Origin: Kudoa neothunni
Lineage: Eukaryota; Animalia; Cnidaria
Length of the DNA stretch: 64,000 nt
Direction of reading: 5' to 3'
Assembly: GCA_964304625.1 (NCBI GenBank)
Contig: OZ199839.1
Location: 5,710,311-5,774,310, forward strand
Both the position numbers and the translations under genes were made by a program. The notes under the pieces were generated by a model. It was given only the letters and a program-made list of their open reading frames with translations. It was not told the origin of the DNA and searched no databases. This document shows positions 19,917 to 57,771 of the stretch, piece after piece. Every line of letters begins with the position of its first letter. The stretch's first letter is position 1.

Positions 19917-21992
19917 ATGTTAGATAGCAAATCACCAAAAAGTTCATCTAATGGTTTAATGGATAGATTAACCGGAATAAAGTTGACATACTTTGTGTTG
20001 TTTTTTGGATACGGAGCAACCCTCCCTTATTTGGCATTGTATTTTCGTCAAATAGGGCTTAATGCAAGTTACGTAGGAGCTATAGCTGGGTTGAGGCCTC
20101 TGGTTCAATTTGTAAGCTGTCCTTTGTGGGCAATAATAGCTGATAGATTTCATGTGAGAAGGATAGTCTTGAACATGTCGATTATTAGTTGGTTGTTGTT
20201 TACGGTTGTATTGTATGTGCCTCGGCCGAAACATTCCTACTGTATGGATTCGCCGATTTTTGATTCTTTGACCAAAAACACAACAAACAAAAATATCACT
20301 GACGTTGCAAAAATATGGCCGAAAATCCTAGCAAAAAATAACAACACCAGTAACGATCCATCCTCACTGGAAAAAATTGAAAGTGTTCCACTAAAGAAGT
20401 AATTTCATCCGTATTAACTTTAAATAATTATTTTAGCGGAACGTTACCCTTCCAAATAGAAGTATCATCAAAAAGAAGTGTTATGGGAAGTGTGAATTCG
20501 TTCCAATTTCGAAATCCTGAACATAATCACGTTTCACCTAGACATCACATTAAAGGAGGTAATCTAACAGAGGCTAATCAAACAGCAAATAATTTGTCGG
20601 ATTCGATGATGTATACAGCACCGTTGGAATTTTTGGCTAGCAATGATAGTTTGTCGCCAACCAAAGTAAACAACCAAAGCAATAATGTTGAAAATCTGAC
20701 CGAGGAATGTCCACTTGCTGAATTTAAAATGAAAACACCAAAAAAACAATTATTGGCAGTGTTTCGGGATGAAACCGAATGTATCCCATTGGTATTCTAT
20801 GAAAAAGAAGAAGTGTTTATAGTGTTTGTTATCCTCATTACATTGACAGCTGTTGGGGAGTTTTTTGAGGCGCCTGCGGTATCGTTGCTGGATGTAGCTA
20901 TACTCGAATGTTTGGAGGATCGCAAAGAGATGTATGGTCAAACTCGGCTCTATGGTAGTCTCGGTTTCGGAATATCTTCATTTATTGTTGGGGTTACACT
21001 TGATTACTTCCACATCACAATATGTAACGAGCAGGTTACTGATTTTATGATTACGTTGTACTTTTTTGTGGGATCCATGATCCTGGCAATTTTAATATCG
21101 TTGCTGTGTGTCAAATTTGGCGATGATACATCATTGATGAGTGAATTTACCAGAAAAGAAAGAAAAAATATTTCAGAAAATAAACCAATCCAGCCCTGCT
21201 CGATTTGTCAAAACAGCAGTGATGATCCAGAAAAACCTTCACAAATAATCATCGATTTGGAATCAATAGATGAGGATTTGACAAAAAGCAAGAAACTCGC
21301 ATTAAAAAAAAACACCCAAAACCTCAGTGAAATCATCGCTATATTCAAACAATCTGAATATCAATTCAATATTCTGGTGTCCCTATTCTTAGGGTTTAGC
21401 CATGGAAGTATAATGAATTTTATCAATTGGTTCCTGGAGGATCTTGGTGCTAGTCGACTTATGATGGGATCGGCTACTGTGATACGAGATTTTGCTGTGG
21501 TTTTTGGGTTCTACATCTCTCCATATGTTCTTAGTGTACTCAGCCAAATGCAAGTTATCACTTGGACATTTTGTGTGTATATTTTCAGCTACTTCTGCTA
21601 TTCATTGATCACCTACCCGTGGTATGCTGTTCCTGTGGAATGCATTCAAGGTCTAGCCTATGCTATTATGTGGTCTTCTTGTATCACTTACTTTGGCGGC
21701 ACCGTATCCAAAGAGAATAGTGCCACAATGCAGGGTATTTATTTAATTGGGTTTGGATGGGAATTTTCCCACCGAACATATTCCTTAATATCCTATATCG
21801 TTTATAGGAGTCATTCAAGGAGTTTATTGGGGATTAGGCACTGGTTCAGGAGCAATTATTGGTGGAATCAGTGTTTTCAAGTATGGCTGCTCAAAATCGT
21901 TTCAACTAGGTGGCTACATCACCTGCTTCGCCATGTTATTCTTCGGATTAATCTATTATTTTTTTGTTCGAAAGAATGTAGATAAGCGATAA
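19917..21992 (+). CDS. MFSD6: Major facilitator superfamily protein MFSD6-like
   Basis: KLTYFVLFFGYGATLPYLALYFRQIGLNA..PLWAIIADRF, YGQTRLYGSLGFG, FINWFLEDLGAS, TMQGVIQGVYWGLGTGSGAIIGG; introns at ~20399-20436 and ~21735-21808. Confidence 0.9.
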
Positions 21993-33672: not shown

Positions 33673-34274
33673 ATGAAAACAATAGGAGTATGGCTGTGTG
33701 CCATGGGACTCACATGGGTGAGCCTCGCAACTACACTTGTGAGAACAAATATGGATCCGGTTGACTTTGCTTATTGCGGCAAAAATGATTGTATTTTATT
33801 GGGGATTATGGCTGATATGATTGTGATTCATTGTAGTCTTTTAGCGTACCCTTTCGAGCTACTAGATGTTCGATTGATTGACCAGATTCAACCAGTCGCA
33901 GAGAATACAGAATACACTATTGAAATAGTTATTCGTTCGCGAGTAAAAAGAGATCTTAACAAAATTCCATTTATGTACGCTATTCATCATATTCTCAAAA
34001 CCCATCCCATCGGAAGCATACAAAAGTTCGATCTCTGCCATTTTGAAAACTTTTGCCCACTCAAAATGGGAGATATACGAACTTTTAGAACTACGGTTCT
34101 TGCAAAACCACACTTTTACACCCCAGTATATAATTTTCTGTCTCCATATAAAACACTAAATTCTATTAGAAAATAACCGCTCCAGATGTTACTATATTAG
34201 ATAGTTTTTCGAATACACTGCTTTGTTTCCGTCCATTTATTAGAATTATTGATTATGATTACCACCATTATTAG
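33673..34274 (+). CDS. Secreted ML-domain/NPC2-like protein 1 (4 Cys)
   Basis: Signal peptide; VDFAYCG; DLCHFENFCPLKMGDIRTFRTTV; final exon KITAPDVTILDSFSNTLLCFRPFIRII; 3 exons. Confidence 0.85.
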
Positions 34275-34689
34275 ATCTAAATTGATTTGCTCAAAGTTCT
34301 TTTCTTATCAAAAGACGGTTGATCATTTAATTTCTCATATTGATTATGTTTAATATATCACTTATTCTTAGGTTTATCTTTGTATAATTTAAAAAAACAA
34401 TATTATCAAGTTATTTCGTTGATGAAAATTTTGTCGATAATAAAAGAAATAATCCACAATCTAATATGATTTAGATACCAGCTTTGATAAAAAAATACAA
34501 AAGCAGTCTATTTTATGCAACAACGCATAAAATATTATTGATTACTTCTATGGACGTAAAATTTTTAGAAAAAGTTTTAATACTTTTGTTGTTCTAAATT
34601 GAAACTAACACACATTCTCTAAGTACAACACTGTTAATAACTTTTAGATTAGTTGGTTCATCGGCAAATCAATTTTAATTCTAGCGGAA

Positions 34690-34800
34690 AATACAGCACA
34701 TCTTCGCTTTTTCTAACTCTGATTAACGCTTCTCCAGAAAGAGCATTTTCTCTTCTGGAAATATCGAAAAAATCAGAACAAATAGAATTTTGTTCTAATG
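34690..34800 (+). mobile_element. Possible hAT transposase dimerisation-domain remnant
   Basis: NASPERAFSLL resembles the hAT C-terminal ERxFS motif; short and degenerate. Confidence 0.35.
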
Positions 34801-34949
34801 AGGAATTTTTTCAACACATTGACAAAATAATGTCATAAAGTTGAAGTTTCTGAGTTAATTATAAATTAACGTAATATTTATACATATAATTAAATATTAG
34901 TTCCGATTTTACAAAAAATTCTGATTTGTCCAAAATTATAAACATAAAT

Positions 34950-37085
34950 CTTTCTTCAAATTGCATCCATGATGATGAAGTCAACAACATAATCCTCATG
35001 TTAAACACTGGTTTCTATATTTCACTATGAAGGAATATAAATGTGAATACGAATCATGCATCAAACTATTTATAGTATATTACATGATATTATGTTTAAA
35101 AACATTAGCAATAAGTCATCATTAATGGCTGTTGTTCAGAAATATAGAATATTAAAAGTTTCCCCATATTCATAACACTTTCTTATTTAAATTTTTGTTG
35201 AATTAAAGAATAATAACTATTTTTAGTATTATATATCTTTCCATTCTAAACGCTCTATCGTTTAAGGCAATTATTGAGTGTGCGTTATTTGGTAAATTGT
35301 CTCCCATCCTTCACTCTAAGAAGTAATTATTAACTGGAAATGTATAAACAACTAATTTCATAGTTCTTAAGAATGTTTAAAAATTAAAACAATCTTCAGA
35401 AACGAATTTTCTTTGATGGATAATTATTAATGAAAAATAAACATAATTACACGATATGTTTGTATAATTTTTTATTTATATATCATCTTATAATTAATAT
35501 TCTTTTTAATTAAATTTCATATTTTGACTATTAAAGTATGATAATTCAAAGCAGGCTCTATTTCTTGATATTTATTATTCAGATCAAAACATTTCAATCA
35601 ATAAAGCTGAAAATAATTTTAATAACTTCTAAAAGACTTCAGATGAATTATCACAATAACATAATATTCATCTTCTCCTAAGATTGTCATTTTCATTATT
35701 CCGACTGCGAATGCACACGATACACTTATCAAATGATGGTTTTTGTGTCAGCTACGAAACAAGCAGTTGGTTTTCTTTTTGTAGGAAATGTTTTTATTGT
35801 CCCAATGGCTGAGAATCGCAGCGCACTTACGAAGTTATACCCTCAATAATGGTTATGAATAACTTCACAATTATCCCTAGTTCAATAAACATCTAGCACA
35901 GTATATCGTTTATTTATCATTTATCGTTTGAAAGTATTATTTTTAAAACTATATCAACGTTAATATAATTCATTGAAATTATATAAAACAAACAAACATA
36001 AAAAGGTAAAATAAATATTTGTGGTATTACTCAACTTTCAAAAATCACTTGTTATACAACATCTCGATTCCTTGTTTTTATCACTTACTCAGTATACATT
36101 TTTCAATAAAAAAAGTTGTTGTCATGGCATCACCGAAAATAAAGAGAAGAGAAATCACCTATATTGTCTTGGTGGAAAAATTAATCATACTTTGTATTGA
36201 TATAGAAAATATATTGATTTCTATTTTAAGAATGAATTTTAAATAACAACAAATTAAGAGCATTTAGTTGGAGTTTTGTTTGTTACAAAAAAGTATTAAT
36301 ATTCAATATCATTAGAATATAATAATTTAATTATTATATTCTTCACCAAATTAATTGTTTTAAACTTAAAAAAATAAAATATGCATTTAATTTTGAAGTT
36401 GTACCTAAATTTGTGGCAAAGAAACATTAGAATATTATTGTAATTTTTAGTTGATTTAATTAAACCCTTAATAATTACATTCCTTTGTTCCATTAAAAAT
36501 CAATAATATGAAGAAAAAAGCGTATATATGGATCATTTCACGGAGAATTAAAAATCGATGTTAAAAATTGGTCGAACAAAAAATTAGTATAAACTCATCA
36601 ACATAACATAATTAATTTTCCAATGATAATAATAACAATAATCCCTCAAATAAATTTCATTCCTAAAGATTATTCTCAATTATTAACTTTGTTAGTAACT
36701 GTTATTTTAGTAAATTACATATTTTCCAATTAATAATAACACATTAAACATAGTTTAGGAGAGAATTTATCAAATAACGCTCGATAATTGCCTCTAATAA
36801 TGTAGCGTTTTGACAATAAAAATTCATAATACTAAAAATAACTATATAGCTTTAGTTAGGATAAAATGAAAATAAAAATATGCTATGAGAATGGAGAAAG
36901 TTTCAATATTCTACATGCCTGGACAACAACCGTTTATAATGGATTATTCGTAATTTGTTTTCATTATAATACCATGTAAAAATAAAATTAACATTCATAT
37001 TCCTTCACAATGAAATATAGAAACCAGTGTTTAACATGAGGATTATATTGTTGACTCCACCATCATATATACGATTGGAAGAAAA
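34950..37085. repeat. Diverged inverted duplication (~34950-35180 vs ~36880-37085), probably a transposon relic
   Basis: taatcctcatgttaaacactggtttctatatttca vs tgaaatatagaaaccagtgtttaacatgaggatta, plus flanking similarity. Confidence 0.65.
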
Positions 37086-37343
37086 ATTTATTTTTATAAT
37101 GTTGGAAAAATATTTTGATGAGTCTCACATGAAAAACGCACATAAGTTTTTTTAGAATTGTTTCTGACGAAAATAGTCGTAAACAACGCTAAAAATGAGG
37201 GAGCGACACCCTCCACAATAACCTATTTTTCAGCCGGGGGTTATATATAGGGATTAAAATATTTTTTTAATTTTACGATATTTCTTTTTAATTTAAATTA
37301 GCACACTCCAGGGTAAAGCAGGGTTTTTTGCGCCAGGCAACTA

Positions 37344-38183
37344 TCTTATTTATAAAAGCTGAAGTGTCCTTGCGTGTGTTTCAGCAAGTACGCATGTGCG
37401 CCAAAATCTTTTCCTTATAGATAGATATTTATGTAACTTCTAATAGTCTACGATAATTTAAAAATTCTTTTATTTGTTATTACACGGACACAAGTCCCAA
37501 AATAACAGAAAATTGAGTTGTCCTCGGTGTTAGATTTGTTTATCGGATTACGTGGTTTCAACTTAAGTTATAAATATACGATTTGAAGATACGTCTTATA
37601 TAGTTTATCTATCTGTACATCTAAAATAGATGTGCGCTTAAATACACTTTAAAAGTTCTATAGATGAAATTTAATATAGCCAAAATATGAAAATTTGCTA
37701 AATTAATGAAGGTTTGGAAGCGTATGTTGTAATCAGATGGATTCAATCTTTATGTAATACTGAAACTAGGTCCCCATATTTCATTGTAGCGACCTTTAGA
37801 CTTAATTTTAAGCGATAAGAGTTAATATACACGGTGAAATCTTACTTTATCTAATTATTTAACATATTTTTGTTTATATTAAGAGGTTACAAAATAGTTT
37901 TGAGGAGAGAGTGTATAAAAATGTGTCGGATAAAGATATTAATTTAAGCAATAAAAATTAATCAACATAAGTTATTCAGATTTTGCTACTTTCATTATCT
38001 CTCTAAAATGATCTAAATTTTTTACTATGCCTATCACAGCTGTTAAAAGTATGATATATAAAAGAAAGATTTATTTAATCTCTCATCAGGGCTAATCAGA
38101 GGTGTCTATTTCTTTACTTGTTGGCCGTATTCTTCAACGATGAAATCTTCTCAATCCCGTGCGAAGCAGGCAGTTTGCGCTAG
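37344..38183 (+). mobile_element. Non-autonomous Helitron-like element
   Basis: 5' a|TCttatttataaaag..., and a 3' GC-rich imperfect hairpin cccgtgcgaagcagg followed by CTAG|t; A/T insertion context and no TSD. Confidence 0.55.
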
Positions 38184-40418
38184 TAAAATTCCAAAATATG
38201 GGATTATAACAAGTTTACAAATTAATTTAATCAGTTTTTAATATTATAATTGTTGTAGGGAATATTGTCAAACGTAATAACAGCCTGTGCCTACCAAACT
38301 ATGATTTTTCCGCTATTTCATAACGCAGTAAACTTTTTGATGTTCCAAAAATATAATCTATATTAAATTCTTTTAATATGAACTTTAGTTTATTTTAATA
38401 TTAAGGAACTTTAAGAATTGTTATTCAGGTTTGTTTAGCCCAATATATTTTTTTCGTACTAATCCACTCCACCTCAAAGGTAAAATTGAGCACCTCTGCT
38501 CTAAGTATCTATGGTAATATTTTTGAGATTTATGATAATCAAAATTCTTTTAATTATATAATTCTCATCAATCACATTTCTTTAATATTTCCAAACCCAA
38601 CTTCTTTAGATCCAATGAGCCAACTCTTCACTAAAATTATTAGGATCTCTCATAAAAATAAACTTTAAATCGATATAAATTGAAACATTTGATAATTGAG
38701 AAAATATTAAAATATATTAAACAATAATGAACTAAAAGTATATGAAAGAATTAATAAAGTTGGTTGTTCTCGGATAAAATAAAAATAACACAATTATATA
38801 TCCCCAATTTAATTTAATAGAATAGAATAGATGAATAAAAAAATGTAAAATTTTTTGCCAAAAATAAGAAAAAACATATTTTTCTTGTAACTTTATTTAA
38901 TGAATAAAAAATGACCGCATTGCTTACTTTTCTTTTTGTACAATGTAACCATTAAATGAAGAGCGTAATATCTTCATCTGTGAAAAAAATAAATTACTTT
39001 TTAATTTTAAATGTCTCAAATATAATTTAAACTAAAAATACTTCTATATACCACCATAATTTACAAATGTTACAAGTACCACACTCCTTCATTCATTGAT
39101 TCTACATTGAGTGTGGAGGTAACGTAATTCGGGTCATGATCCCATTAGCACCATTTAAATCAAAGAATCTCTTTTGTGGCCAAGTTGCATAATCCTCCGC
39201 TTAACATATGGGATATACGGTTCGAAGTTTAAAACGCTTCTTAAAAGGTCAACTAAGCAGCTTATGGTCGTGTTATAGAATAAACTGAATGAAAAAAGTA
39301 AACGAGAAATTTTTGACTATTCGGCAAAAATGATAATCTTAATTTTGTTTGAAATATAACAATAAGCTGAAAAATTACATTCCAGATAATACTTAATAAC
39401 AATTATGAACGAATGAAAGAATTAGTCTAAATATAAAGTGGTTCATCGTTGATTCATAAACAACTCATTCTGGTCCCTAGAAATGCTCATTATAAAAAAT
39501 CCTCAAAATCATAAATACTTATGTGTTTGATATAATATTTATAGTATACGCTTATTTTTTATTCTTTAAATATATATTAAAACGTTTCCCCTTTAAGTAA
39601 GTTAGTTGAGCACATTACATTAATTATATTTAACGAACATTAATCAAAACCAATTTTAATGCAAATAATAATATTTCCACGTTAAATAACGAAAGTGATT
39701 TAAAAAATGAACTATTCAATCCAATAAGATTTTTAGGACAAAAAGTGGATCATGGTGCTATTTATTAGAGTCCGAATTATGTGTAGCGTATCGACCCAGC
39801 TTCTGATCTGTTGATCTATTTATCTATTTAGATATCCAAGGAATTAAATGTAAAAATCTGTAATATCGCCATCACTAATTATTAACCAAAACAGTTACAA
39901 ATATATACGAAGTAAGATGTCTAAAAATAAAAAAAATTAATATGATATCTGATTGATATTATCTTAATTTTTCCCACCTTTATATGTATTATCGCTTCAT
40001 TCGTGTTTTTTCAAAAATTAATCTACATGAAACAAAATTTATCTGGAAATATTGTTGTTAATATCAAAATAATATTAAATAAAATCTGGTATATTTATAT
40101 AATATTTCTAGGTAGATTTGTTCACAAAAATCTAGGAAACAGTTAATTTTTTTATATTTGTTGATAAGAATTCAGATTATCGTTGATCCGAGTTCCATGT
40201 AAGTTCAAAAATGTGTGTGTGTGAGGTTAAACTGTTATAATTTGTAGGGAAGTAATCCATACATCTTAATTTAATCCAATTGATTATATTTTATTGTGGG
40301 ATTAACACCATTTAACATAAATAACGGGTTATACAGATAATCCGAATAGTTCAACTATACCACAGTGGTTTTATTGATAGCTAACATCAACCGAATTCGA
40401 TTGAAAATTATTTGAAGT

Positions 40419-41280
40419 ATGAGCGACGTTAAAATTATGCAATGTTACAATAGGAAAGTGATATCGGTATGCTTTAATTTTTATATAATAATTATATTTT
40501 ATTATCTAAACGAATAATATCTTTCCAGTTCAGAGTGGAAGTAAAACGTATTATACATGAAACAAAACTATTGCATGATGCCATTGGTAAGCTTGAAATT
40601 ATTTTCCAAGATTCTTCAGAATTGGAGTCTCGGGTAATATATTCGCCAACTGATCTATTGTGAGGTTCTAATATTTAACTAATTCCAACTTTTAGCATCG
40701 ATTGAAGTGTCACGTTGCCGCAATGACTCAACAAATAGCATTGTAACTATTTCTAATCAAATCAAATATTATACCTTATAAATTATTAATACTAATATAT
40801 AATTATGATAGGAGAAATGATCTACTTGGTTGGATATATCACCTGTATAAGGGTTATAAAACTAATATGGAGAAAATAATCAATTACGTGATTTAATTTT
40901 GTGAATACTGATTTTATTACTTCACTTATAGAACCCTGAAAAAGAGTTCCATATGGAATTAATTCAATTTTTCGAAAAGTATTATTATCCATCTATTGAA
41001 TATTACAGAAAATTTAGTATGGTAATTCCCGTCTTAGTTTCCAGATGTCACAGGTGTATATTTACAATGTATAATATTGATTTTATTAGACTCACAGAAA
41101 AAGTTTGATCGGAATCGGTTGTGAAGATCCCACTTTAAATGAGACTTTAAAAATGATAGAATTAGTAGACGGAAATACAGATGAACTGAGAGAAATTTTG
41201 TATTTTTACTTAATTTATTATTCGTTAATTTGGTTATTAGAATGGATATCGTCGATATAGAGGAGGTGAACGCATGTTGA
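40419..41280 (+). CDS. Putative multi-exon orphan gene or pseudogene
   Basis: Short exons bounded by GT/AG splice in frame: HRLKCHVAAMTQQIAL|RNDLLGWIYHLYKGYKTNMEKIINY|NPEKEFHMELIQFFEKYYYPSIEYYRKFSM|THRKSLIGIGCEDPTLNETLKMIELVDGNTDELREIL|MDIVDIEEVNAC*. The 5' exons do not join cleanly. Confidence 0.4.
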
Positions 41281-41659
41281 CCACTTTACATTTCAATTAG
41301 TTTGAAAAGTAGTTAATCCACTTTTTATAGTGTCCGTTTTTATGTATTTTTCTTTTTTTACCGCTTAAATCTTCTAAATCTGTTAAAAATTATATAACTA
41401 ATTATATGATTTTAATATTGACAACCATAATGTAAAAAAATTGATCCATATTACACCACGCCAAAATGTTTATTTTTGCTAATATTTTATTTAATGGAGA
41501 AAAAATTTTTAGATTATTCCAAAAAACTTTGGATTTGCTATTTTTTTCAATAGTTTGTTCGAAATGAATTAAAAAACTATTATTCTCCGCCAAATTAATC
41601 GTATATCTATTTCTTGTCTAAAAGTGGCTTAAATAAGGATAGATAAAATGATTCTTTTA

Positions 41660-42931
41660 TAAAGTTTTCCGAGCTTTAATGACATGGTATTTAAGATAGC
41701 TATGTAATTCGGTGAAAAAATACGAAAATATTACTTTAAATTTCGAATGAACAAAAAATAATAATTTTGGGAATTTGAAAAAGATATCCAAACACTATCG
41801 TATAATGTATACTTATTCTAAAATAATTTCTCGGTTCAAACATCTGCTGATATATCGAAGCATTTTTCGATAATAATTTGAGCAGTCGTTGGTGGAAATA
41901 ACTTTGAAACCATCATCTATTAAATTTAAAAGGTCGCTTTCATTTCTCGCATGTCCTCTCACAACATGGTTTTTCCATTTGCTGAAAACATTTTCAATTG
42001 GATCCATGAAGGGTGAATACGGAGGTAGATACATCAACGTTAGTTGTAACGTTGCTAAAATTTCGCTAAGTCCCCGATAATGATGTATCCTTGCATTATC
42101 GAGTATGAAGCATGGATCTTCAATTTCCAAAGAACGGCACAAATCTGCCAACTCAATGAGGAACTCTTTAAAATCTTCGCCATTTACTGGTCTTCGATTT
42201 ATTTTATATGGCACCATGCCATACTTATTCATCGCTGCAATGACGGATATGTTCCTTGACTTGACGGCTTTTACGTTTACATATGCTGATGTACCAGCAA
42301 GCTAACGATCCTGTCTTGTACGTGACGATACATTAAAACCAACTTGGTCAATAAAAACAAAGTTGCTGCCTTCTGCCTCAAGCAATTTTGAATTGAACTC
42401 TTGGGCGTACACAAAACGTTTTTCCACTGTATCGTCAGAGTTTCTTCGTTCAGGAACAATGGTGAGCATTTTTAAAGAATAATGGAATTCTTTAAGGCAT
42501 CTATTTATTGTGCTAACGCTAACACTCACGCCACATTCGTCTAATAATTTTTGACGAAGAGTCTTGAAGAAAAGTCACCACCCCTTTTTAATGACTTTTC
42601 TTTCCCATCAAGAAGATACGATTTTACAATTGAAGCAACAGTTTGTCGCTTGATTCCAACATTTTCAGCGATGACGGCATTGCTGTAACCCAATTCGCAC
42701 TGATTAGCAATCACTTTCCTATCTCGGTCACTTATTGTTTGTCTCTTAAATTTGGTTCGAGTTGTCATTTGAGAATCGTCGCTATTATCTGTTTTTAAAG
42801 TTTATAAATATTAAACTAACGTGTAATGTTGAATTTATACCACTCATATTATTTTTATTCGATTAATTTACAATGTGAACGTAAACATAAGCTTAAATTA
42901 CGCACGTGTCACTAAAGCTCGGAAAACCCTA
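41660..42931 (-). mobile_element. Tc1/IS630-type DD34E transposon with TIRs; transposase disrupted
   Basis: HTH N-terminus, FVFIDQVGFN, CFILDNARIHH...YLPPYSPFMDPIE (34 residues between D and E); in-frame stop at 42302 and a break near 42541; TIRs ttttccgagcttta(a/g)tgaca at ~41665 and ~42926. Confidence 0.9.
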
Positions 42932-43132
42932 TATTTTCAATAAGTCTAACTCCGTTCAGAGAGATAGAAGCTAAAATATATAATTAAATAATTTTAATTC
43001 GAATGTTTTTTGACAATATAAATTTACCAATCCATTAACACTTAAATTTGATTTTTAGAATGAACTAAACTTAATTCATTCGAAACACATAACAGATAAT
43101 AATTAATAAAATTCATAATCTTATTCTCTTAT

Positions 43133-43154
43133 GGACGGACGGACGGACGGACGG
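43133..43154. repeat. (GGAC)n microsatellite
   Basis: Directly visible. Confidence 0.9.
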
Positions 43155-43768
43155 CCGCTCTATGGAAATGATAGCGATATAAAGAGAGGTATCATTTTGT
43201 TATCAGTACAAAATTCTTATTTTCGAACCGAATATTCCATCACTTGTCAACATCACAATAAGGAGAATGTATTCAATCTATTATTATTTTCTGCTCATAA
43301 ATAAGGTATTCACCTTTGACGGGTCCTTGGAAGATGGAAAAATTATTTACAATTTCAACCTTAGTTAATCAACTAATAATAGCGCTAGTTTATTGATTAT
43401 GCCAAATAATATATTTTAAATAAAAAACACATAAGAACTAAACACCCTTGAGAGATAGTGAATTGGGTACAAATGCGGGATTATCTATTGGACGGATATG
43501 AGCCGCAAAGGTCCAACCGCTGTAGTTAACACCTACAATGAAATAAACTTCAAATGGGATTTAAGGAGTTACACTGACTGTCTATCTTAGCAAACATTTA
43601 AATTTGTTAAATAAAGATAAAAATTGGTTTTCTAGAAGCAGTAAGCGCAAAGAATAAAATAACAAATTCTATTGGCAAGGTCGGAATGAATATATTGTCT
43701 GAATATAGAGGAAAAGCCGACCACTCTTAACAACTAGGAAAGATACGCAAGATTGGTGGTTAGTACAA

Positions 43769-44355
43769 ATGATTGGTCTACTTGGAATTCTGTTTTTGTG
43801 TGCATTTATCGGATCAACCCAACAAATGTCTATTGTGGATTTGGAGGAGCAATCGTTTGATATTGGGTGGAATTGTTCTGATCCCAACAGTAAACTATGG
43901 TATAATGCAACTAAAAATTATGATGGAATTTATTAGCATGGGCTTTCCGATTATGGAATGTATCGATTGAAGGATGTGACCACCATACTTTATGTGTGAT
44001 CAGAAGGGGTTCTCCATTTGATGTGAAAGTAATCGTGCAAGCTGTGAAAAGAGTCAACTTTTTCACGCTTTCCATGAGAATGGGTCACGGTTACAGTCAG
44101 TATCAGGTTGCGCTCAAGAATTCCAGTCCCTGCACGAGTGATATCGACTTTTGTCCTATGCTCATAGACGACATAAGACTGATTCCAATTGAATTTTTCA
44201 TTGGTAAACACACTCCCAAAGTAATCGTTTGTGTTATCCATCATCGACAACACTACATTCATCTCACCTAGGGTTATTTTCTTCCCACAATCACCTTCAG
44301 CGACAACTACAAACAGGATCTGCTTTGTATTCAGATTCCAATCAAAATAGTATAG
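43769..44355 (+). CDS. Secreted NPC2/ML-domain protein 2 (canonical 6 Cys)
   Basis: MIGLLGILFLCAFIGSTQQ...GWNCSDPN|TWAFRLWNVSIEGCDHHTLCVIRRGSPFDVKV...SPCTSDIDFCPML...TPK|GYFLPTITFSDNYKQDLLCIQIPIKIV*. Confidence 0.9.
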
Positions 44356-45314
44356 TTGAAGTGTGGTACTATATATGAAACTTTGTATAAACAACTTGTG
44401 TGATATAAAATGGATTTCAAGAGTTAATATCATTTTTGCGCCTCTGTTTTTTTTGATAACTACGAAAGACAGTTGTTAACAGTTGTCAACCTCATTAACT
44501 GAGATTCTATCTATATTTAATAGAGAATCTCATTGGTTTAAGTTTACGTGGGAGTAAAGGAGATGTGTGAACAAACCTCAAATATAGTGTTACTGTTGTG
44601 GTAAACAACAGATATGTAGGAGCAAATAAAGCCAAATAATGTTTCCTCTGTTGTTAGATAAGCTATTTAGTGGGCTATAAATGTTATTTATCTAATAAGA
44701 ATAACATAGTTAATAAGTTTTTACATAAAAAAATGGATAAATATGAAAAGGAGCAATTACAAGCCGAACATTAAATAAAATTGTAAATCGAAAAAAGTAC
44801 GAAAACACACAGTAATAGATCTAATATTTATGTAAATTAATTGTAACATTATCTACTACTACAACATCAATATTAAATCCAGTCAAAGTGGAGTTATTTC
44901 CCAAAAAAGCTATCACAATAATACAACAATCAAAAAAAAGATTTGTTGCCCTGATTCTAAATCTGTGGCATTATCAAAGCTATTAACTTTTGTTTTCGAT
45001 CTGCAACATCAACTGTAGTAGAAACTGATCGTTTGGCTAATAAAGTGGTAACTCGGAACTGTTTTGGTGAAAAGAGTTAATAAAATCACTGAGAACAAGG
45101 TGATAACGGTACTAATCGGCTATATGTTTCAATCTACTCAATTTTAGTTTTAGTAATCACGCAATATTATTGTGTATTAAGGTCTATAACATAATCAACT
45201 GTTTATTGGCTGATTTAATTCATAAGAAGTAACGAGGACGATACCTGCAAACTAATTGTGCCGTCCAAGTTGGATTAAAATTCACACATAGTTGGCCAAT
45301 ACACATAAACAACT

Positions 45315-46005
45315 ATGTACAAATTGGTCACCACTTTTGCTTTGCTTATAATATGGAATTTTGGTGGTTGCCGTTGTTTTACAGCATATGATGATGATTG
45401 CTTTGATGGATTTTTCGGCTTATACGAGCTGGGCACAGATTTGAAAACCTGTCACAAGGGAGATGCAGCCAACAGTATGTTGTTTAGTTTGGTGTGAGTT
45501 CTGTTGTAAGTGAATGAAAATAGTGCACCTTGGTATTGATTATGTGAAAATATACAATTGGACTCAAAATCTTCCGGTTACAATCTTCAAATATCAAGAT
45601 GAGCGCAACTATGACCGAGTGTTAAGACTGTTGATAAGAGTTTCACACAAAACAAACGCCCACTATGAAAATTTGATTCCTGTAACCGAGGTCAAAGATA
45701 TTTTCTCCTCAATCTACTATTTCACCACAACCATTGGTGTTCCAATGTATGTAGTGGGACTAAATTGTACCAAGCCCAGTAGATGTCCTGTCGTTGTGCA
45801 AGGATTTCGCCCTGTAGATATAAAGTTGTCTATCAATCTAAAACATTGGCCATATAAGGTAGGTGTTTGCCGAATGGATTTTTTACTGTTAATTTTCCAT
45901 TATATATGAAATCCATTTTAGGACAACATGAATTTGAAAGTGCAAATGAGAATTGGTGGATACAGAGACTTGTTATGTTTTGATATCCCATTGATATTTT
46001 ATTAG
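45315..46005 (+). CDS. Secreted divergent ML/NPC2-like protein 3 (4-Cys subfamily)
   Basis: Signal peptide; LKTCHKG; LNCTKPSRCPVVVQG; last exon DNMNLKVQMRIGGYRDLLCFDIPLIFY*; same intron phases (1, 0) as the other ML genes. Confidence 0.8.
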
Positions 46006-47360
46006 TTCTTTTGTATGATCTCTTTTTGTTGGCCCTTGTTTGTGTTAGCCACACAGTTGTTGATTACTAGGAGATTAACTAAGTCAGTTTTATTTCTACG
46101 GATTAATATTACCATAATTTATTTATTTATTTATTTATTTATTTTCTCTTAACAACTTCTTGCCCCTCAAATTTCACTTAAAACGTAACCACTTTAAAGG
46201 ACTTCAACCCAATTCTTCATACAGACAGCTTCATCTAACTCTTTCTTTTCACACTCTGGCAAAAGTGGTTCATTTGAGGTTGTACAACAATAAAAATATC
46301 CACAAAAATGAATACTGTGGACGAACGATTCTAGTATTGAATTATAACTCCCAAACCAGACATTTTTATCGGTCGACGCGAACCTGTCCAAATGAGATAT
46401 CTGAATTACGGATCAATAAAGAATGTGCCGCAGCAATAAAGCGAAAATCTTGGATCAAAGATTAATATAATTAACTGATTATGCAAAATTTAGATTAATT
46501 TTGCCTAAGTAATATTCATTTTATATACCAAGTGGATTTTAAGGATTAAATCACTTCTTCTATCTTAGGTTTATTAGAGAATCTGATTTAATCATTAGAA
46601 TTTAAAAATTGAAAAATCAAACTTGAGAATTAAAATTTAAATTCAAAGGAAAAACATGTACACATGAAGAAACATCTACTCCTAAGTAATAATAATGTGA
46701 AAACGATCCCAATATCCCGTATTAACGTCAAAAAAAAATATTTTAACTAAAATAATGTCGTTAATTCGTAATAATTTTATTAGGTTAATCAGGAAAAATT
46801 ATAAATACAATATGTGCAAATAAAGTAATGAAATTGGATAAGCTAAATATTATTTTAGTAATATAAATTAGAACATCTGTATATAGGCAGGATATCGAAA
46901 TATGACCATGTCAATAAGATTTTTATAAGATAATTAAATAATGAATTGTTAGAATACGATTAAATCGATGGCTACTCCCAAAAAATTTTTCACAAAGATG
47001 TAATACGAAGAATTTGAATTTTAAGCGATTATTCCGAATCTATGTTATTTTAAAACCGTTTAATTTATTTTTTTGTATTTCCATCGTTATATAGCGCCGC
47101 CATCTGTGTTATCAGGGATATTTTTTTGAGCGCGAAACATATTTAGGGACAGAATATAATAAGTCTGTTATAAGAATGAAGCCATAAATGCAAATTTAGC
47201 TAAATGTTGAGCATAACTCGTTTTTAGCTTTATTTTTTGCACAATATATTGTAGATTGATGGTTAAAACTCAAACAAACTGTTAACTATTCACATTTTTA
47301 TTGAGCGAAGGAACAGGGATCGCTCTATCTGACCCAGTTGTTGAATTCACATAAAACATT

Positions 47361-48067
47361 ATGCAAAAACTCCAAACAGCCATACTTATATTGTTGAATT
47401 ATTGTTTCGTTCTAAGAGCAGACAATGAGGATTATTTTAGTGGGGTTTACAGCATATTTAATCTAGGTGGAAAGTTGAAAACATGCCACAAAGGACAAGC
47501 AAGAAATAGTATATTTTTGTTGGTTTTGTTGAGTATTTCTATATTTTACAAATTTAGAAGATCTATTTATCGAATCGGTGACAATATTCAACGTGACTGA
47601 TTCGAATCTTCCAGTGCCTATCTTTAGATACCATAAGGAACACAACAATAACAGAAAGTTGAGTATTATTATTAACGTCAAGCACAAAGCCCTTAGACAC
47701 TATGAAGACACGACGAAAACAAAAATCAGTCGTCTTTTTGCTTCTATCTTCTATTTTACCACCACAATCGGCGTACCTTTAGAAATAGAGTGGTTGGGTT
47801 GTCGCAGAATCCAAGATTGCCCAATCATTGTCCAAGGATCTAGATTTGAAAATATTAGAGCAACAATCGATCTGACGAAATGGCCATACAGGGTAGGTTC
47901 TCACCGGTTACCAACCGCTGCTAATCATCTGTTTGTTGATTAGATTATTGTGAAAATTCTCGCCTATGTAATATTTCTTATAGGGCAAAATGAATTTAAA
48001 GATACAGATGAGAATTGGTGGATACAGAGATTTATTGTGCTTTGATATTCCATTGATATTTCATTAG
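47361..48067 (+). CDS. Secreted divergent ML/NPC2-like protein 4 (paralog of protein 3)
   Basis: LKTCHKG; SIFYFTTTIGVP; LGCRRIQDCPIIVQG; GKMNLKIQMRIGGYRDLLCFDIPLIFH*. Confidence 0.8.
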
Positions 48068-48523
48068 CCGAATAAGTTCAAACAGTCTTATTTAATCCCA
48101 TACACTTGTACAATTATTGCTTATTAATTATGTCTCATAGTAGCTAATGGAATGATTCGATATTAATAGTAATTGTTCAATTCTGATTATTTTCTTCGCC
48201 TTGCGATTACTGTCAAAAATTCCAAATAGATTTCTATTGTTGGCTCGCACTGAGTTAAATCGAATGGCTGTTTAATTCCTAGGAGAACAAATAGTTTATT
48301 TTTTATCTCAATGCGGCCTTATTCTGTGAACTGAATAGATGTATAAAAGTTATCAAAAAGTTATTACTTCTTTTTTAAATAGTCTCCATGGGTTTCCTAT
48401 CTTATCATACAGATGATTTCAAACAATCCGATTGAATAAGTAGTTCCGTCGTCTCTCTTTATACAGCTTACGCCTCTTGGATCAATCCTCTAGGTTCGCC
48501 GCGACGATAACGCACACAATCTA

Positions 48524-49164
48524 ATGTCTACACAAACCAACTCCAATAAAACATTGTGTTTCGTGTGCATCTTAATTGTTGCTATCACTGTCCCAATCAC
48601 CAACGCTTCTTTCTTTAGTCGTCGAAAACTTCCAAAAGTGAATGTACTTCAATCGCCGATTGGTCATAACTGTTCCCAAGTAGAACGTAATTTGTTGTAG
48701 GCTGTTGTTTCCTTGGTTGATTCGTTGGTAATAGAATGGAAGGCGGATATTCTGAATATCTCATTTCCAGGCTGTTTGAGTGAACCTTGTGGACTCAGAC
48801 TGAGTCATGTTAATAAAGTGATGGCTACAATTGTTGCCAAAGAAACCATAAACGAAGTTCACCTTTCTGGGTACACGTATGTTGGAATAATCAAAGTGAA
48901 AATGAATATTTTGGATCCGAATCCTTGTGGTGTGTCTGTGGACTGCCCAATTTGGCCGGGAGAGACCCGGGTGTTTCCCATAAGTATCAAATCCCCTTCA
49001 TATATCCCTAACAAGGTATGTGATTTAGTGGTTGAATTCCATCACTAAGAAACTTTAACCTAATACATAATTAGGTCTATAATCCTGTGATCCATGCACA
49101 TAGTGACAAATCTCACCGCAACGAAATTCTTTGTGCATCCATCCGAATTATCCCAGTGAAATAA
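48524..49164 (+). CDS. Secreted NPC2/ML-domain protein 5 (canonical 6 Cys)
   Basis: Signal peptide; IGHNCSQVE|QWKADILNISFPGCLSEPCGL...DPNPCGVSVDCPIWPGETRVF..YIPNK|VYNPVIHAHSDKSHRNEILCASIRIIPVK*. Confidence 0.9.
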
Positions 49165-49629: not shown

Positions 49630-50680
49630 ATGAGAACGGGGAAAAGATACTTATTAGTGGCTTTGATAGTTGTCGCATCAATAACGTTATTGGTGGTTAT
49701 GTGTGAATTGTACAATCAACCAGAATCAACGATCAACTCGGAACAGCTAATAACTGAAACTGTGGAACATTTACGTCAAGCAGGGAAATTAATTATGAAT
49801 ATTAAATCTTCTTCAAGTTATCATGTGATTTTTTTATGTTAATCAATAACAACAATCTAATAGTTTATTTGGTTGAAATCTATAGGAATATTCAAAAGGG
49901 AAAACCAAAGAGGGCTACAACGACTTGGTTACAGTGGCCGATATCACATCCAACCAGCTGATTAAAAAATTCTTTTCCTTACATTATCCCAAAATAAAGC
50001 TGCTCACCGAAGAAGACTACGAAAAAGACAAAATATACACAAAAAGCCTCAAAAACGCTATCGATAACACCCCCATTGTATCCAATGAAATCGACGAATC
50101 ATCGCTAATAGCCATCATTGACCCATTGGATGCCACTCAGGAATACACCGAGGGACTGTATCAATACACCTCGATTATGGTGTGTTTTCTACTGAACAAC
50201 CGCCCACTAATTGGCATAACATATTTCCCATCGATAGATCAAGCCTTTTGGGTGCACAACCAAAACAAAGACTCTGGCAACTTTGATAAGGTTTCTGAGA
50301 TTTTCAAAGTGCAACGAAACACATCTGCTATCAATGTGATAGTTTCAAGATCACATACGGGAAATATTTCCAAATGGATATCCCAAATTGCAAATCACCG
50401 ACACAATGTGCATGTTATTAAAGCTGGAGGTGCTGGTTATAAATCAGTTATGGTAGCTGGGAATGCAGCTGATATCTATCTTCACGCTACCGCCATTAAA
50501 ATATGGGATGTTTGTAATGGGTTGGTTTTCGGAGAGCACTTTCCAAACCTGAAAGCCTACGATACCACGCTAAATGATATCAATCTCGAAATCGATCACC
50601 CGGTGCTACATAAAGGATTCATTCTGGTCAATAACACATCGCTCCTTAGTTTCCTCTTAGAAAATAAACAACCTAATTAG
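49630..50680 (+). CDS. IMPAD1: Golgi 3'-phosphoadenosine 5'-phosphate phosphatase (IMPAD1/BPNT2)
   Basis: N-terminal TM anchor; KGKTKEG..VTVAD; IIDPLDATQEYTEGL; AGGAGYK; IYLHATAIKIWDVC; one intron. Confidence 0.92.
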
Positions 50681-54039: not shown

Positions 54040-55892
54040 TTTCTGAATTTAGTTAAGGCAAAATTTTAATAATTGAACAATTTTTATATAAAAATAATCA
54101 AATGCTTGTGTACACTTAGAAAATCGTCTATTTTATATTTTGATAACTGCTGTATCATATTGATTATTTTATGACAAATATAACAGTTTATAATTTTTGT
54201 TAGAAGATAATGGACACATTGAAACAACAACTTTCAAAATTAAATAATATTTTAATTTTTCATGATCGCAATTTCAAACAAATTCAGTCATATAACTTTA
54301 TGCGGTAAATATAAATTTCCGAAAAAAAATTGAAAACTAAAAATCATATTTTAGAATAATAAATCGCAATAAGATTTACATTTCATCGATTGGATATGAA
54401 CAAATTGATTTGCTCAGTTTCTGAAATGTAACACCATTATAATGAGCACTTAAACTATCATTTTGGTCAAATAATTATCTTAAGAATAATTTAAGTGATT
54501 TAATATAACTAATATGTTAAAATATTTGACAAATAATGAAATTGACAAGTTCCTTATTTATTTATTTAATTAATTAATTAAATAAATAATAAGAATCGAG
54601 CAAAGATTAGCGACAACAAAGATGCAAAAAGGGTTGTTTTTTAGGTGTCACAGGCCACAGTATTTATAATTACAATTTTTTCAATGGAATAGGTATATAT
54701 TTACAGATGATGACAATAATGGTTTATTAGATAACCCACAAGAATAATTTCTGAATAACATTTTTAAATTAATATTTGAACATGTTTAAATATTAATGAA
54801 ATATTATGAAACTACGATAAATTATATTATAACAATAATCTTACACAAAATACATTACAATTGTGCGTACAATAAATTTCATTAAAACGGCACTATTTCG
54901 AATTATTGAATGTGTATTCTATTGTCATAAATTACTAAAATTGTAATTAATCTGCTTTTAGGTGGATAGAAATCACGACAATATTTTAAAATTATTTTGG
55001 ATGAAATATTTAGACGTTGAGCTCCAATAAGGCGAAACATTTGCTCTCGCTCGTTTAAAAGTTAAATTAACATTAAGCACGAAAGCGTTGATATACTTTC
55101 GCGCCCCTTCAATTGCCGGAAAATGAATAATGAATCAGCGAAGAATATAATTATGTCTCAAATTTAAAGGACAAACTAAAATCAAGTTCACTAGAATATT
55201 AGTAAAATCTCCATCTCATTATCATCAGATCCACTAGAAGTTGGCTTTCGATAGCTAGAATGAGTGGAATAAATTATTTAGTTAGCATTGCTATCACAAT
55301 AAATGGTGGAAATTTCATAAAATTCATACTTAAGGTTTTGTCCGCATATTTAGGTAAATTTATGTGTCATTGTGAATGATCATGATCTCGATTATATGTT
55401 TTCCCTATTTGTTCAATATGTCGCCGACTTAGTTCAACCAAACTCAACTATTCATTTCTAAAAATATCTTGTTATTGTTGAAAGCAATAAAACCCTGGGA
55501 TAAATTGACCCCAAAAGCACCAACTGTATATTTTGTTTGTATATCGTGGTTTATTGTACTTTTTCAAATTTTTTCTCCACAACTTTAAATATTATATTTA
55601 TTATGAAAATATTTCAATAGATATCACGTTTCTTAAATGCTTCTATGCATAGAAAACTCATAATACGGTAAAAGCTCGGAGGTCGATTTTGCCCAGAAAC
55701 GCTCGCTCAGATTCAGATGGCTGGCATTCGCGTGTGAAAGTGGGAAGTAAAATAATTTTAATGGATTTTCAACGGAAACTGATTGAAACGCTTTTCTTTT
55801 GTTTGTAATAAAAAAATTCTCACTGCAATTCAAAAAAAGGTTTCGAAGTAACTCGAATAAATTTAGAAGAAAGTGAACTATAATAGCGGAAT

Positions 55893-57771
55893 TTAAGATT
55901 TAATGAAATTTGCCACATAGGTTTGAATAAGTTGTTTGAGGGAAGCTTCGGTGTCTTTCGAAATATGGCCTTCATTTTTAATTTTCTAAAAACCATTAAA
56001 AATAAACGGATAACCCAACCAACTAGGAATACAGTAATAATATCTTTTCCAGCCGATCTCAAATGTTTCACAAATCCCTTCTCAAAGTTGGTGATTTCGG
56101 AAGGATCAACCGAATCGAGAAGACCCTTTACTCCACCATACAATATGCACACTTGTTCAGCATCATCGATAGGCACATATTGTCCTTGTTTGAGTAGTTC
56201 GGTCAAACGTTGACCTCGTTTAAGAAGTGACTGAGTTGCGGCATCCAAATCGGATCCGAACTGAGCGAAGGCGGCAAATTCTCTGTACTGAGCCAGTTCC
56301 AACTTCATACTACCAGCGACTTGTTTCATGGCTTTAGTTTGAGCGGCGGAACCCACACGACTCACCGACAACCCGACATTGATAGCAGGTCGAATACCTT
56401 TGTAAAAGAGTTCTGTTTCAAGGAAAATTTGGCCGTCAGTAATCGAAATCACATTGGTGGGGATGTAGGCGGATACATCACCAGCCTGAGTTTCGATGAT
56501 TGGCAGTGCAGTTAACGAACCACCTTTGAAGGTTTCACTCAGTTTGGCTGCCCTCTCCAACAATCTTGAGTGCAAATAGAAAACATCGCCAGGATAGGCT
56601 TCTCTTCCGGGTGGTCTTCTTAACAACAGTGACATTTGACGATAGGCAACTGCCTGTTTGGAAAGATCATCGTAGATAATCAGTGCATGTTTGCCGTTGT
56701 CTCTGAAAAATTCACCCATAGCACATCCTGAATAAGGCGCCAGATATTGAAGTGGTGCAGCATCAGACGCGGTGGCACTTACCACAATTGTGTAATCCAT
56801 AGCGCCAGAATCAGTCAAACGCTTCACTAATTGAGCTACTGTGCTTCTTTTTTGGCCAATCGCCACATAAATACAGTAGAGTTTTTTGCTGTCATCCACC
56901 GAATCATTGAAACGTTTTTGGTTGATAATTGTATCCACAGCGAGGGCAGTTTTACCGGTTTGACGATCTCCAATGATCAATTCACGCTGGCCTCTGCCAA
57001 TCGGCACCAAACTGTCCACAGCTTTGATTCCTGTCAACATGGGATCTCTCACAGATGCTCGAGGTATAATACCGGGAGCTTTTACATGAACTCGGGCTCT
57101 TTTCTGTGACACCACTGGACCAGCACCATCAATCGGATTGCCCAATGCATCCACCACACGACCCAACAATCCATCACCAACAGGCACATCAACAATAGCA
57201 CCTGTTCTTTTGACAAGATCGCCTTCTTTGATCAATTTGTCGTTACCGAAAACCACTACTCCCACATTGTCTGGTTCCAAGTTGAGTGCCATACCCTATT
57301 AACAAAATTAAAGTCAAACACAAAGCAACAACCAATCACAATCAATGTTTTTCTAAGAGATGAGTCTCACTTTTAGTCCCGAAGCAAATTCAACCATTTC
57401 TTCCGCTTGCACATTTCTCAGCCCATACACACGAGCAATACCATCACCAACCGATAAAACTGTTCCACTTTCTTCGAAATCGGTTCCCATCGAATACCCG
57501 GAAATTTTGGCGTCCAATATAGTAGATATTTCCGAGTGCACTAATGGTTACAGTTAAATATTCAGCTCGACGTTTCGATATATCCAACAGTTACCATCAA
57601 CTTTACGGGTTTTAGTCAAATTCCTCAATCCAAGCAACCCCAACGCTGAAATGCCGCTAACTTTTTTCAAATTCTAATAGATTGAGTTCCATACACAATA
57701 ACCACATCACTTATTACTGTGGTTGTATGAGAGAGTTGGGAAGACTTGGCTCGAGATAACGTCCTCAGCAT
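55893..57771 (-). CDS. ATP5F1A: Mitochondrial ATP synthase F1 subunit alpha
   Basis: Transit peptide MLRTLSRAK; [10 protein letters not shown]; P-loop GDRQTGKT; [22 protein letters not shown]; spliced C-terminus [30 protein letters not shown]. Confidence 0.97.

What the first reader, a model, noticed from the sequence alone, without database searches (positions are those of the whole stretch)
33673..49164. Cluster of five divergent secreted ML/NPC2-fold lipid-binding proteins: candidate lipid-scavenging or host-modulating system
Seen in sequence: five same-strand genes (33673, 43769, 45315, 47361, 48524), each with a signal peptide, a phase-1 intron just after the first Cys, a phase-0 intron before the last exon, and a terminal (L/I)LCxxxxx strand. 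Two keep all six NPC2 cysteines. Three lack exactly the second and third Cys, a pair that forms one disulfide in NPC2, so the fold looks preserved while sequences diverged strongly. The ORF track misses this because the genes are spliced. Established: ML domains (NPC2, MD-2, Der p 2, GM2A) bind sterols, lipid A or glycolipids, and NPC2 expansions in symbiotic cnidarians are linked to sterol acquisition. Inference: in a reduced, probably parasitic genome, this array may be a diversified secreted set for capturing host lipids or interfering with MD-2/TLR4 sensing.
Basis: partly seen in the sequence, partly recalled or inferred. Interest (0 to 1): 0.85.

Follow-up and report, generated by a model that had tools for sequence, protein, structure and literature searches.

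The report
Divergent ML/NPC2-like gene cluster in Kudoa
A fish-muscle parasite with a very reduced genome (most likely the myxozoan Kudoa neothunni) carries a cluster of five small, spliced, secreted genes that are very diverged relatives of the NPC2/Der p 2 lipid-binding fold; such expansions are known in other parasites and in cnidarians, so this is a new example, not a new kind of system.

Summary
Five same-strand, three-exon genes start at the stated coordinates. All have GT-AG introns of 44-91 nt (phase 1, then phase 0), a hydrophobic N-terminus and the stated cysteine pattern. g2 and g5 keep six framework Cys. g1, g3 and g4 lack exactly the second and third.

No gene reaches Pfam's ML threshold exon by exon, so membership rests on indirect links:
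- **g2/g5:** their middle exons match those of two Pfam-positive ML genes elsewhere in the genome (hhalign P 2.5e-5), and their best solved-structure hit is Der p 2.
- **g1:** both exons are the best non-training hits of leave-one-out profiles, and its model is closest to NPC2, though weakly.
- **g3/g4:** with a third copy 2.6 Mb away they form a subfamily with insertions. It is tied to the family by the last exon (P 2.7e-5) and identical gene architecture. Its modelled middle exon is only a generic beta-sandwich.

No homologue turned up in three word-indexed searches or in one HMMER scan of 1.84 billion proteins with the g3/g4 profile.

The lipid-carrier role is inferred. Host-lipid scavenging is plausible and MD-2/TLR4 interference unlikely. 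Expression could not be tested. The scan's own notes already record this stretch and the g3/g4 pair.

The parts
33673..34274 (+). g1: 167-aa secreted ML-like gene with four framework Cys (lacks Cys2 and Cys3). Exons 33673-33790, 33845-34125, 34170-34274; introns 54 and 44 nt.
   Evidence: Models. Leave-one-out profiles rank its exon 2 (E 0.11) and exon 3 (E 0.3) first among non-training segments. AF2 of exon 2 gave pLDDT 77.3. Foldseek's top hit is human NPC2 5kwy_D (E 0.021, TMq 0.59), followed by 1nep, Der f 2, Der p 2, GM2A, and yeast and ant NPC2. No Pfam hit.
43769..44355 (+). g2: 162-aa secreted ML-like gene with six framework Cys. Exons 43769-43889, 43937-44220, 44272-44355; introns 47 and 51 nt.
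   Evidence: Model. The best PDB sequence hits of exon 2 are Der p 2 and Der f 2 (E 0.015-0.08). g2+g5 exon 2 against the two Pfam-positive ML genes gave hhalign P 2.5e-5 over 81 columns. Three N-x-S/T sequons.
45315..46005 (+). g3: 192-aa member of the divergent subfamily. It has four framework Cys, an N-terminal extension and an insertion after the first exon-2 strand. Exons 45315-45474, 45524-45858, 45922-46005; introns 49 and 63 nt.
   Evidence: Model. Subfamily alignment. Exon 3 of the subfamily against the canonical set gave hhalign P 2.7e-5, prob 74%. Exon 2 gave only P 0.041, in the expected register. AF2 of exon 2 gave pLDDT 76.9 and an all-beta model, with fold searches returning generic sandwiches only. 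Against g4: dN/dS about 0.06 in exon 3 and about 0.23 in exon 2.
47361..48067 (+). g4: 188-aa paralogue of g3 (46% identical in exon 2, 85% in exon 3). Exons 47361-47508, 47558-47892, 47984-48067; introns 49 and 91 nt.
   Evidence: Its exon 3 is the best non-training hit of the canonical exon-3 profile (E 0.049).
48524..49164 (+). g5: 177-aa secreted ML-like gene with six framework Cys. Exons 48524-48686, 48735-49015, 49075-49164; introns 48 and 59 nt.
   Evidence: Model. Pfam ML domain PF02221 is the only family hit for exon 2, but below threshold (E 0.018-0.037; 14.8-15.8 bits against 22.7). Best PDB sequence hit is Der p 2 (E 0.5). hhalign together with g2. Four sequons.

Best explanation
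The region holds a lineage-specific cluster of five paralogous genes for small secretory-pathway proteins of the ML (MD-2-related lipid-recognition; NPC2 / Der p 2 / GM2A) beta-sandwich family. The genome is most likely that of the myxozoan Kudoa neothunni. With one dispersed copy and two more canonical ML genes on another chromosome, the genome has at least eight ML genes.

Shown:
- common descent (same two intron positions and phases, same Cys framework, reciprocal profile hits);
- great age and purifying selection for the g3/g4 pair;
- paired loss of one disulfide in four of the eight.

Inferred:
- Each protein is a soluble carrier that buries a hydrophobic ligand (sterol, fatty acid or other lipid) between its two sheets.
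- The more canonical genes on C1 are the likeliest partner of the NPC1 gene that the genome retains.
- The diverged cluster genes have taken on other ligands or compartments. The most likely role is handling lipids taken from the host muscle fibre by a parasite with a much reduced gene set.
For: - Gene models, intron phases and Cys spacing are shared by all eight genes.
- PF02221 is passed by the two C1 genes (30.8 and 31.5 bits against 22.7).
- g2+g5 against those two: hhalign P 2.5e-5 over 81 columns.
- Der p 2 / Der f 2 are the best PDB sequence hits of g2 and g5.
- g1: rank 1 in leave-one-out searches for both exons, and NPC2 is the top Foldseek hit.
- g3/g4/L008: exon 3 hhalign P 2.7e-5 and reciprocal best non-self hits.
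- dN/dS is well below 1 with saturated dS for g3 against g4.
- N-terminal hydrophobic segments and N-glycosylation sequons are present.
- NPC1 is present at C2:~7.00 Mb.
- Comparable tandem, divergent NPC2-like expansions occur in Clonorchis, arachnids and symbiotic cnidarians, which are described as sterol auxotrophs.
Against: - None of the five reaches Pfam's ML gathering score exon by exon.
- Profiles of the five or of the subfamily hit no ML entry in the PDB.
- g1 against the canonical profile aligned out of register.
- The g3 exon-2 model matches only generic Ig-like sandwiches, with Z below 5.
- The Foldseek E-values for g1 are weak (0.02-0.3), Asf1 and glycosidase sandwiches are interleaved, and the alignment used for folding contained the canonical ML genes, so that test is partly circular.
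- There is no expression, secretion or ligand evidence.
- Only exon pieces were modelled, so no cavity could be examined.
Confidence: 0.6

Rival explanations
1. The genes are ML-fold proteins, but they serve spore or polar-capsule formation, a developmental role inside the parasite. They do not take up host lipid.
For: PMC8056827 states that an NPC2-type protein of Tetracapsuloides follows the expression of polar-capsule minicollagens. It also states that an ML homologue ('ecdysteroid-regulated 16 kDa-like') is in the Ceratonova shasta polar-capsule proteome.
Against: The statement is second-hand. The main text of the cited proteome paper does not mention it. Nothing links these particular Kudoa genes to that protein.
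Confidence: 0.2
2. g3, g4 and the dispersed third copy are not ML proteins. They are an unrelated secreted beta-sandwich family that happens to sit between two ML genes.
For: - No Pfam, PDB or Atlas link to ML.
- No hit in 1.84 billion proteins.
- The exon-2 profile comparison is only P 0.041, prob 1.3%.
- The model resembles generic sandwiches.
Against: - Same intron positions and phases, and the same C-x5-CP, aromatic-Pro and LLC spacing as the Pfam-positive genes.
- Exon 3 hhalign P 2.7e-5 against the canonical set.
- Reciprocal best non-self hits.
- They lie between g2 and g5.
Confidence: 0.15
3. The proteins are secreted into the host to mimic or block MD-2 and so alter TLR4 sensing.
For: Only the shared fold class with MD-2 and Der p 2.
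Against: There is no specific similarity to MD-2 in any search. From general knowledge, not tested here: Kudoa plasmodia lie inside muscle fibres, and the MD-2/TLR4 LPS pathway is atypical in fish.
Confidence: 0.04
4. Some or all of the five are decaying duplicates without function.
For: There is no expression evidence. g1 is isolated by 9.4 kb of transposon-rich DNA.
Against: - All five keep open frames, canonical splice sites and the Cys framework.
- g3/g4 show dN/dS of 0.06-0.23 at saturated dS.
Confidence: 0.05

Closest known systems
NPC2 / ML domain family (Pfam PF02221: NPC2, Der p 2 and Der f 2, GM2A, MD-2)
   Same: - Size of about 130 mature residues, with a signal-type N-terminus.
- Cys1-Cys6 and Cys4-Cys5 framework, 'CP' after Cys5, and an aromatic-Pro before the last two strands.
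- Der p 2 is the best sequence hit for g2 and g5.
- NPC2 is the best structural hit for g1.
   Different: - Below the Pfam threshold exon by exon.
- Cys2-Cys3 disulfide lost in g1, g3 and g4.
- g3/g4 have an N-terminal extension and an insertion where the Cys2-Cys3 loop sits.
- Sterol-contact residues were not assessed.
Expanded NPC2-like genes of the liver fluke Clonorchis sinensis (PMC6979364)
   Same: - Many low-identity NPC2-like paralogues in a parasite, often on the same scaffold.
- Only one retains the cholesterol-binding residues.
- Functions beyond sterol transport have been proposed.
   Different: - 32-35 genes there against eight here.
- A flatworm, not a cnidarian.
- Most fluke genes are described as keeping a recognisable Pfam ML domain and three disulfides.
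Non-canonical NPC2 of symbiotic cnidarians (PMC6548501)
   Same: - The host phylum is Cnidaria.
- There is a canonical and a diverged NPC2 set, and the diverged set moves sterols from another organism to a sterol-auxotrophic animal.
   Different: - Those proteins are recognisable NPC2s with shown sterol binding and symbiosome location.
- Orthology with the Kudoa genes was not tested, and none was detectable by sequence.
Lineage-specific NPC2 expansions in arachnids and insects (PMC13151251, PMC12386980)
   Same: Tandem duplication and rapid divergence of a small lipid-carrier fold.
   Different: Those are proposed to carry semiochemicals in sensory organs. A myxozoan has no such organs.

Membership tests
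ML domain (PF02221) | Score above Pfam's gathering cut-off (22.7 bits) | tested here: not met
   Tested exon by exon only. g5 exon 2 scored 14.8-15.8 bits (E 0.018-0.037); g1-g4 gave no hit. The joined proteins were not scored, so about 30% of the domain (first and last strands) is missing from each test. The two C1 paralogues pass on exon 2 alone with 30.8 and 31.5 bits.
ML domain (PF02221) | Significant homology to bona fide ML proteins | tested here: met
   - g2+g5 against Pfam-positive L001+L002: hhalign P 2.5e-5, 81 columns.
- g3/g4/L008 exon 3 against the canonical set: P 2.7e-5, 11 columns.
- g1: rank 1 in leave-one-out searches, E 0.11 and 0.3.

The link is indirect for g1 and g3/g4.
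ML domain (PF02221) | Cysteine framework (three disulfides in NPC2: 8-121, 23-28, 74-80) | tested here: inconclusive
   Cys1, Cys4, Cys5 and Cys6 are present at conserved spacing in all five. Cys2 and Cys3 are present only in g2 and g5. The disulfide map is from PMC6979364. Bonding itself was not tested.
ML domain (PF02221) | Ig-like beta-sandwich closest to solved ML structures | tested here: inconclusive
   - g1 exon 2 model: NPC2 ranks 1, 3 and 4 in Foldseek, but E is 0.02-0.08, TMq 0.59-0.60 and VIA Z 4.7.
- g3 exon 2 model: beta-sandwich, but no ML entry in the lists shown.
- Only partial domains were modelled.
ML domain (PF02221) | Internal hydrophobic cavity that binds a lipid | not testable with these tools
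   This needs a full-length model or a structure, plus binding assays.
NPC2 proper (lysosomal sterol hand-off to NPC1) | Conserved sterol-contact residues and an NPC1 partner | not tested
   An NPC1 gene is present at C2:7,002,056-7,006,013. The sterol-contact residues were not mapped, because I held no reference NPC2 sequence by id.

The most novel reading that the evidence does not exclude
The g3/g4/L008 subfamily may be a Kudoa-specific derivative of the ML fold that has taken on a new function. Its marks are the motifs KTCHKG, FTTTIG(V/M)P, CPVVV(Q/E)G and GY.DLLCFD.P, an N-terminal extension, and an insertion replacing the Cys2-Cys3 loop. The strongly constrained last strands and the rebuilt cavity mouth would then serve a new ligand or a host-facing role not seen in other ML proteins.
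Probability: 0.25. Interest if true: 0.55.

Novelty: new member of a known kind. Interest (0 to 1): 0.38.

Why it matters
Myxozoans have lost much of the ancestral cnidarian gene set. A reduced genome that keeps and diversifies eight ML genes, and keeps NPC1, points to sterol and lipid handling as a function the parasite cannot give up. How a muscle-dwelling Kudoa feeds on its host is poorly known.

The genes are probably missing from the published annotation. No encoded protein was found in the protein collection, and the annotation paper says its gene predictions relied on protein hints. They also illustrate how fast-evolving small secreted genes escape both ORF calling and HMM annotation in this group.

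In the papers searched, only one holds both 'myxozoa' and 'NPC2'. A myxozoan ML expansion therefore appears undescribed, although the phenomenon itself is well known elsewhere.

Tried and rejected
- **Word-indexed protein searches:** g2 exon 2, g3 exon 2 and the canonical L002 ORF all came back blank.
- **Full HMMER scan:** the g3/g4/L008 profile found 0 hits in 1.84 billion representatives.
- **ESM Atlas:** feature search with g3 exon 2 gave no useful hit. Shape search gave generic sandwiches.
- **PDB profile searches:** A1 and A2 found nothing relevant.
- **g1 against the canonical profile:** hhalign aligned the Cys4-Cys5 loop to the Cys2-Cys3 loop, out of register, so I did not use it as support.
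- **First model of g1's last exon (34201-34353):** rejected in favour of 34170-34274.
- **Weak subfamily hit at C3:7477101:** it is a transposase-like ORF, not a family member.
- **Organism guesses that failed:**
  - Nematode: no SL1 by Rfam or pattern, and no cuticle-collagen N domain.
  - Arthropod or Demodex: no R&R cuticle domain.
  - These blanks are weak, because the tool's controls did not ring either.
- **Contig C4 (18,219 b):** fetched only to identify the organism. I do not take it for human. It fits the circular mitochondrial genome reported for K. neothunni, and I did nothing further with it.
- **Joined step:** Everything was done exon by exon, by reference. Joined translations were made only inside scripts, to check frames and to count residues.
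Full report
**1. What is there**

The window is AT-rich, about 26-42% GC in 2-kb bins. The ORF list breaks the region into short frames. Reading the three + frames at the five stated starts and placing GT...AG introns gives five three-exon genes:

| Gene | Exon 1 | Exon 2 | Exon 3 | Length (aa) |
|---|---|---|---|---|
| g1 | 33673-33790 | 33845-34125 | 34170-34274 | 167 |
| g2 | 43769-43889 | 43937-44220 | 44272-44355 | 162 |
| g3 | 45315-45474 | 45524-45858 | 45922-46005 | 192 |
| g4 | 47361-47508 | 47558-47892 | 47984-48067 | 188 |
| g5 | 48524-48686 | 48735-49015 | 49075-49164 | 177 |

- Introns are 44-91 nt, and all ten acceptors end in TAG.
- Intron 1 is phase 1 and lies 4-7 codons after the first framework Cys.
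- Intron 2 is phase 0. It lies 22-24 codons after the 'CP' Cys, and 18-19 residues separate it from the last Cys.
- Each product begins with a hydrophobic stretch and carries one to four N-x-S/T sequons.
- g2 and g5 have six framework Cys. g1, g3 and g4 lack the second and third.
- PMC6979364 gives the NPC2 disulfides as 8-121, 23-28 and 74-80, so what is lost is one whole disulfide.

My only change concerns g1. My first choice of last exon was wrong, and a 44-nt intron to 34170 gives the tail ...NTLLCFRPFIRI..., which fits the family.

**2. Which genome**

- G000 has 40,260,978 bases in four contigs, and the window is C2:5,710,311-5,774,310.
- The ATP synthase alpha and MFSD6-like genes of the window are animal-like.
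- Nematode and arthropod markers were blank.
- Earlier follow-up notes of this scan call the genome Kudoa neothunni.
- I checked that against PMC12239612. The final K. neothunni assembly is 40.2 Mb, with three chromosome scaffolds plus a circular mitochondrial genome, genomic GC 30.41% and intron length 49 bp. All of these fit what I see.

I accept the identification as very likely, although no marker gene was compared. The parasite lives in yellowfin tuna.

**3. Is it the ML family?**

Direct tests are weak.
- Exon by exon, only g5 touches PF02221 (E 0.018-0.037; 14.8-15.8 bits against a cut-off of 22.7).
- The best PDB sequence hits of g2 and g5 exon 2 are Der p 2 and Der f 2, at E 0.015 and 0.5.
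- g1, g3 and g4 give nothing.

The own genome helps.
- PF02221 finds two genes on C1 (L001, L002) that pass the cut-off on exon 2 alone. Both have the same two introns in the same phases.
- A profile of the five middle exons finds those five plus one more gene, at C2:8,380,553-8,381,240 on the minus strand (L008). It is a third member of the g3/g4 type.
- Further profile searches add no more.

So the genome has at least eight such genes.

Links between the groups:
- **g2+g5 against L001+L002, exon 2:** hhalign P 2.5e-5 over 81 columns, in full register.
- **g3/g4/L008 against the other set, exon 3:** P 2.7e-5, probability 74%. For exon 2 the value is only P 0.041, but in the expected register.
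- **Exon-3 profiles:** a profile of the four canonical-type genes has g4 and g3 as its best non-training hits among 2000 six-frame segments of the window. The reverse profile has g2 as its best non-self hit.
- **g1:** profiles built from the seven other genes rank g1's exon 2 and exon 3 first among non-training segments (E 0.11 and 0.3). Two adjacent exons, correctly ordered and both ranked first, are hard to ascribe to chance.

**4. Structure**

Only single exons could be folded.
- **g1 exon 2** (pLDDT 77.3). Foldseek puts human NPC2 first (5kwy_D, E 0.021, TMq 0.59) and bovine NPC2 third. Der f 2, Der p 2, GM2A, and yeast and ant NPC2 fall within the first 35, but Asf1 and glycosidase sandwiches are mixed in. 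VIA-align gives NPC2 Z 4.7 at ranks 16-17.
- **g3 exon 2** (pLDDT 76.9). It is an all-beta sandwich, but it matches only generic Ig-like domains.

Both alignments used for folding contained the canonical genes, so the g1 result is partly circular. I count structure as weak support for g1 and as inconclusive for g3/g4.

**5. Are they functional genes?**

- g3 against g4, last exon: dN 0.07 and dS 1.2.
- g3 against g4, middle exon: dN 0.44 and dS about 1.9.

This is an old duplication under purifying selection, strongest on the last two strands. It is not recent gene conversion. All five genes keep open frames and canonical splice sites. The assembly paper also notes that very few host transcriptome reads mapped to the parasite.

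**6. How it most likely works**

Shown: a family of small secretory-type proteins descended from the ML fold, diversified in place.

Inferred from what ML proteins do (NPC2 binds sterol; Der p 2, MD-2 and GM2A bind lipids): each is a soluble carrier with a hydrophobic pocket.
- The genome keeps NPC1, so one ML gene, most likely one of the canonical C1 genes, should act as its NPC2.
- The cluster genes are then extra carriers. Cnidarians are described as sterol auxotrophs that use diverged NPC2s to take sterols from symbionts, and Kudoa is a reduced intracellular parasite. I therefore put host-lipid handling first.
- A role in spores or polar capsules is a real rival.
- MD-2/TLR4 mimicry has nothing in its favour beyond fold class.

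**7. Comparison and novelty**

Tandem, low-identity NPC2-like expansions are described in Clonorchis (35 and 32 genes, grouped on scaffolds, only one with the cholesterol residues), in arachnids and insects, and in symbiotic cnidarians. This is a further member of that kind, in a phylum branch where I found no description. Only one paper in the library holds both 'myxozoa' and 'NPC2', and the Sphaerospora genome preprint does not mention the family.

The g3/g4/L008 subfamily is the less ordinary part:
- no hit in 1.84 billion proteins;
- an N-terminal extension;
- an insertion where the Cys2-Cys3 loop sits;
- a nearly invariant last exon.

**8. Limits**

Every such test used single exons by reference, which costs sensitivity. 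Joined translations were made only inside scripts, to check frames and to count residues. C4 was fetched only to identify the organism and then left alone.

Noticed in passing
G000:C2:8380553-8381240 (minus); locus L008 1373-2057: A third member of the g3/g4 subfamily lies 2.6 Mb from the cluster. It has the same three exons and intron phases and the same KTCHKG, FTTTIGMP and GYMDLLCFDLP motifs.
   Followed up: yes
G000:C1:14981300-14981880 (L001 1326-1904) and G000:C1:3105358-3105897 (L002 1344-1883): Two more canonical ML genes pass Pfam PF02221 on exon 2 alone and have the same intron positions. They are the likeliest housekeeping NPC2 candidates.
   Followed up: partly
G000:C2:7002056-7006013 (+): An NPC1-like gene (NPC1_N and Patched domains) is retained, 1.24 Mb from the cluster on the same chromosome.
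   Followed up: partly
window 34924-37111: An element with inverted arms of about 360 nt (87% and 71% complementary parts) around a 1.5-kb core lies in the 9.4-kb AT-rich gap between g1 and g2. It is probably a foldback or TIR transposon.
   Followed up: no
window 41813-42768 (minus): A Tc1/mariner-type transposase (Pfam DDE_3, E 9e-17) is split over at least three ORFs, so it is probably a dead copy.
   Followed up: no
window 43990-44433 (minus): A 147-aa ORF lies antisense to g2 exons 2-3. It has no support of its own and is best read as a by-product of the + strand gene.
   Followed up: no
window 49925-50680 (+), 55820-57292 (-), 19884-21985 (+), 11554-11988 (-): The neighbours are ordinary housekeeping genes: an inositol-monophosphatase family gene directly after g5, mitochondrial ATP synthase alpha, an MFSD6-like transporter and a VPS11-like N-terminus.
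   Followed up: partly
G000:C4 (18,219 b; loci L017, L018): The fourth contig has 44% GC against about 31% for the window's chromosome. The standard tRNA scan found nothing in its first 10 kb. It fits the circular mitochondrial genome reported for K. neothunni.
   Followed up: partly
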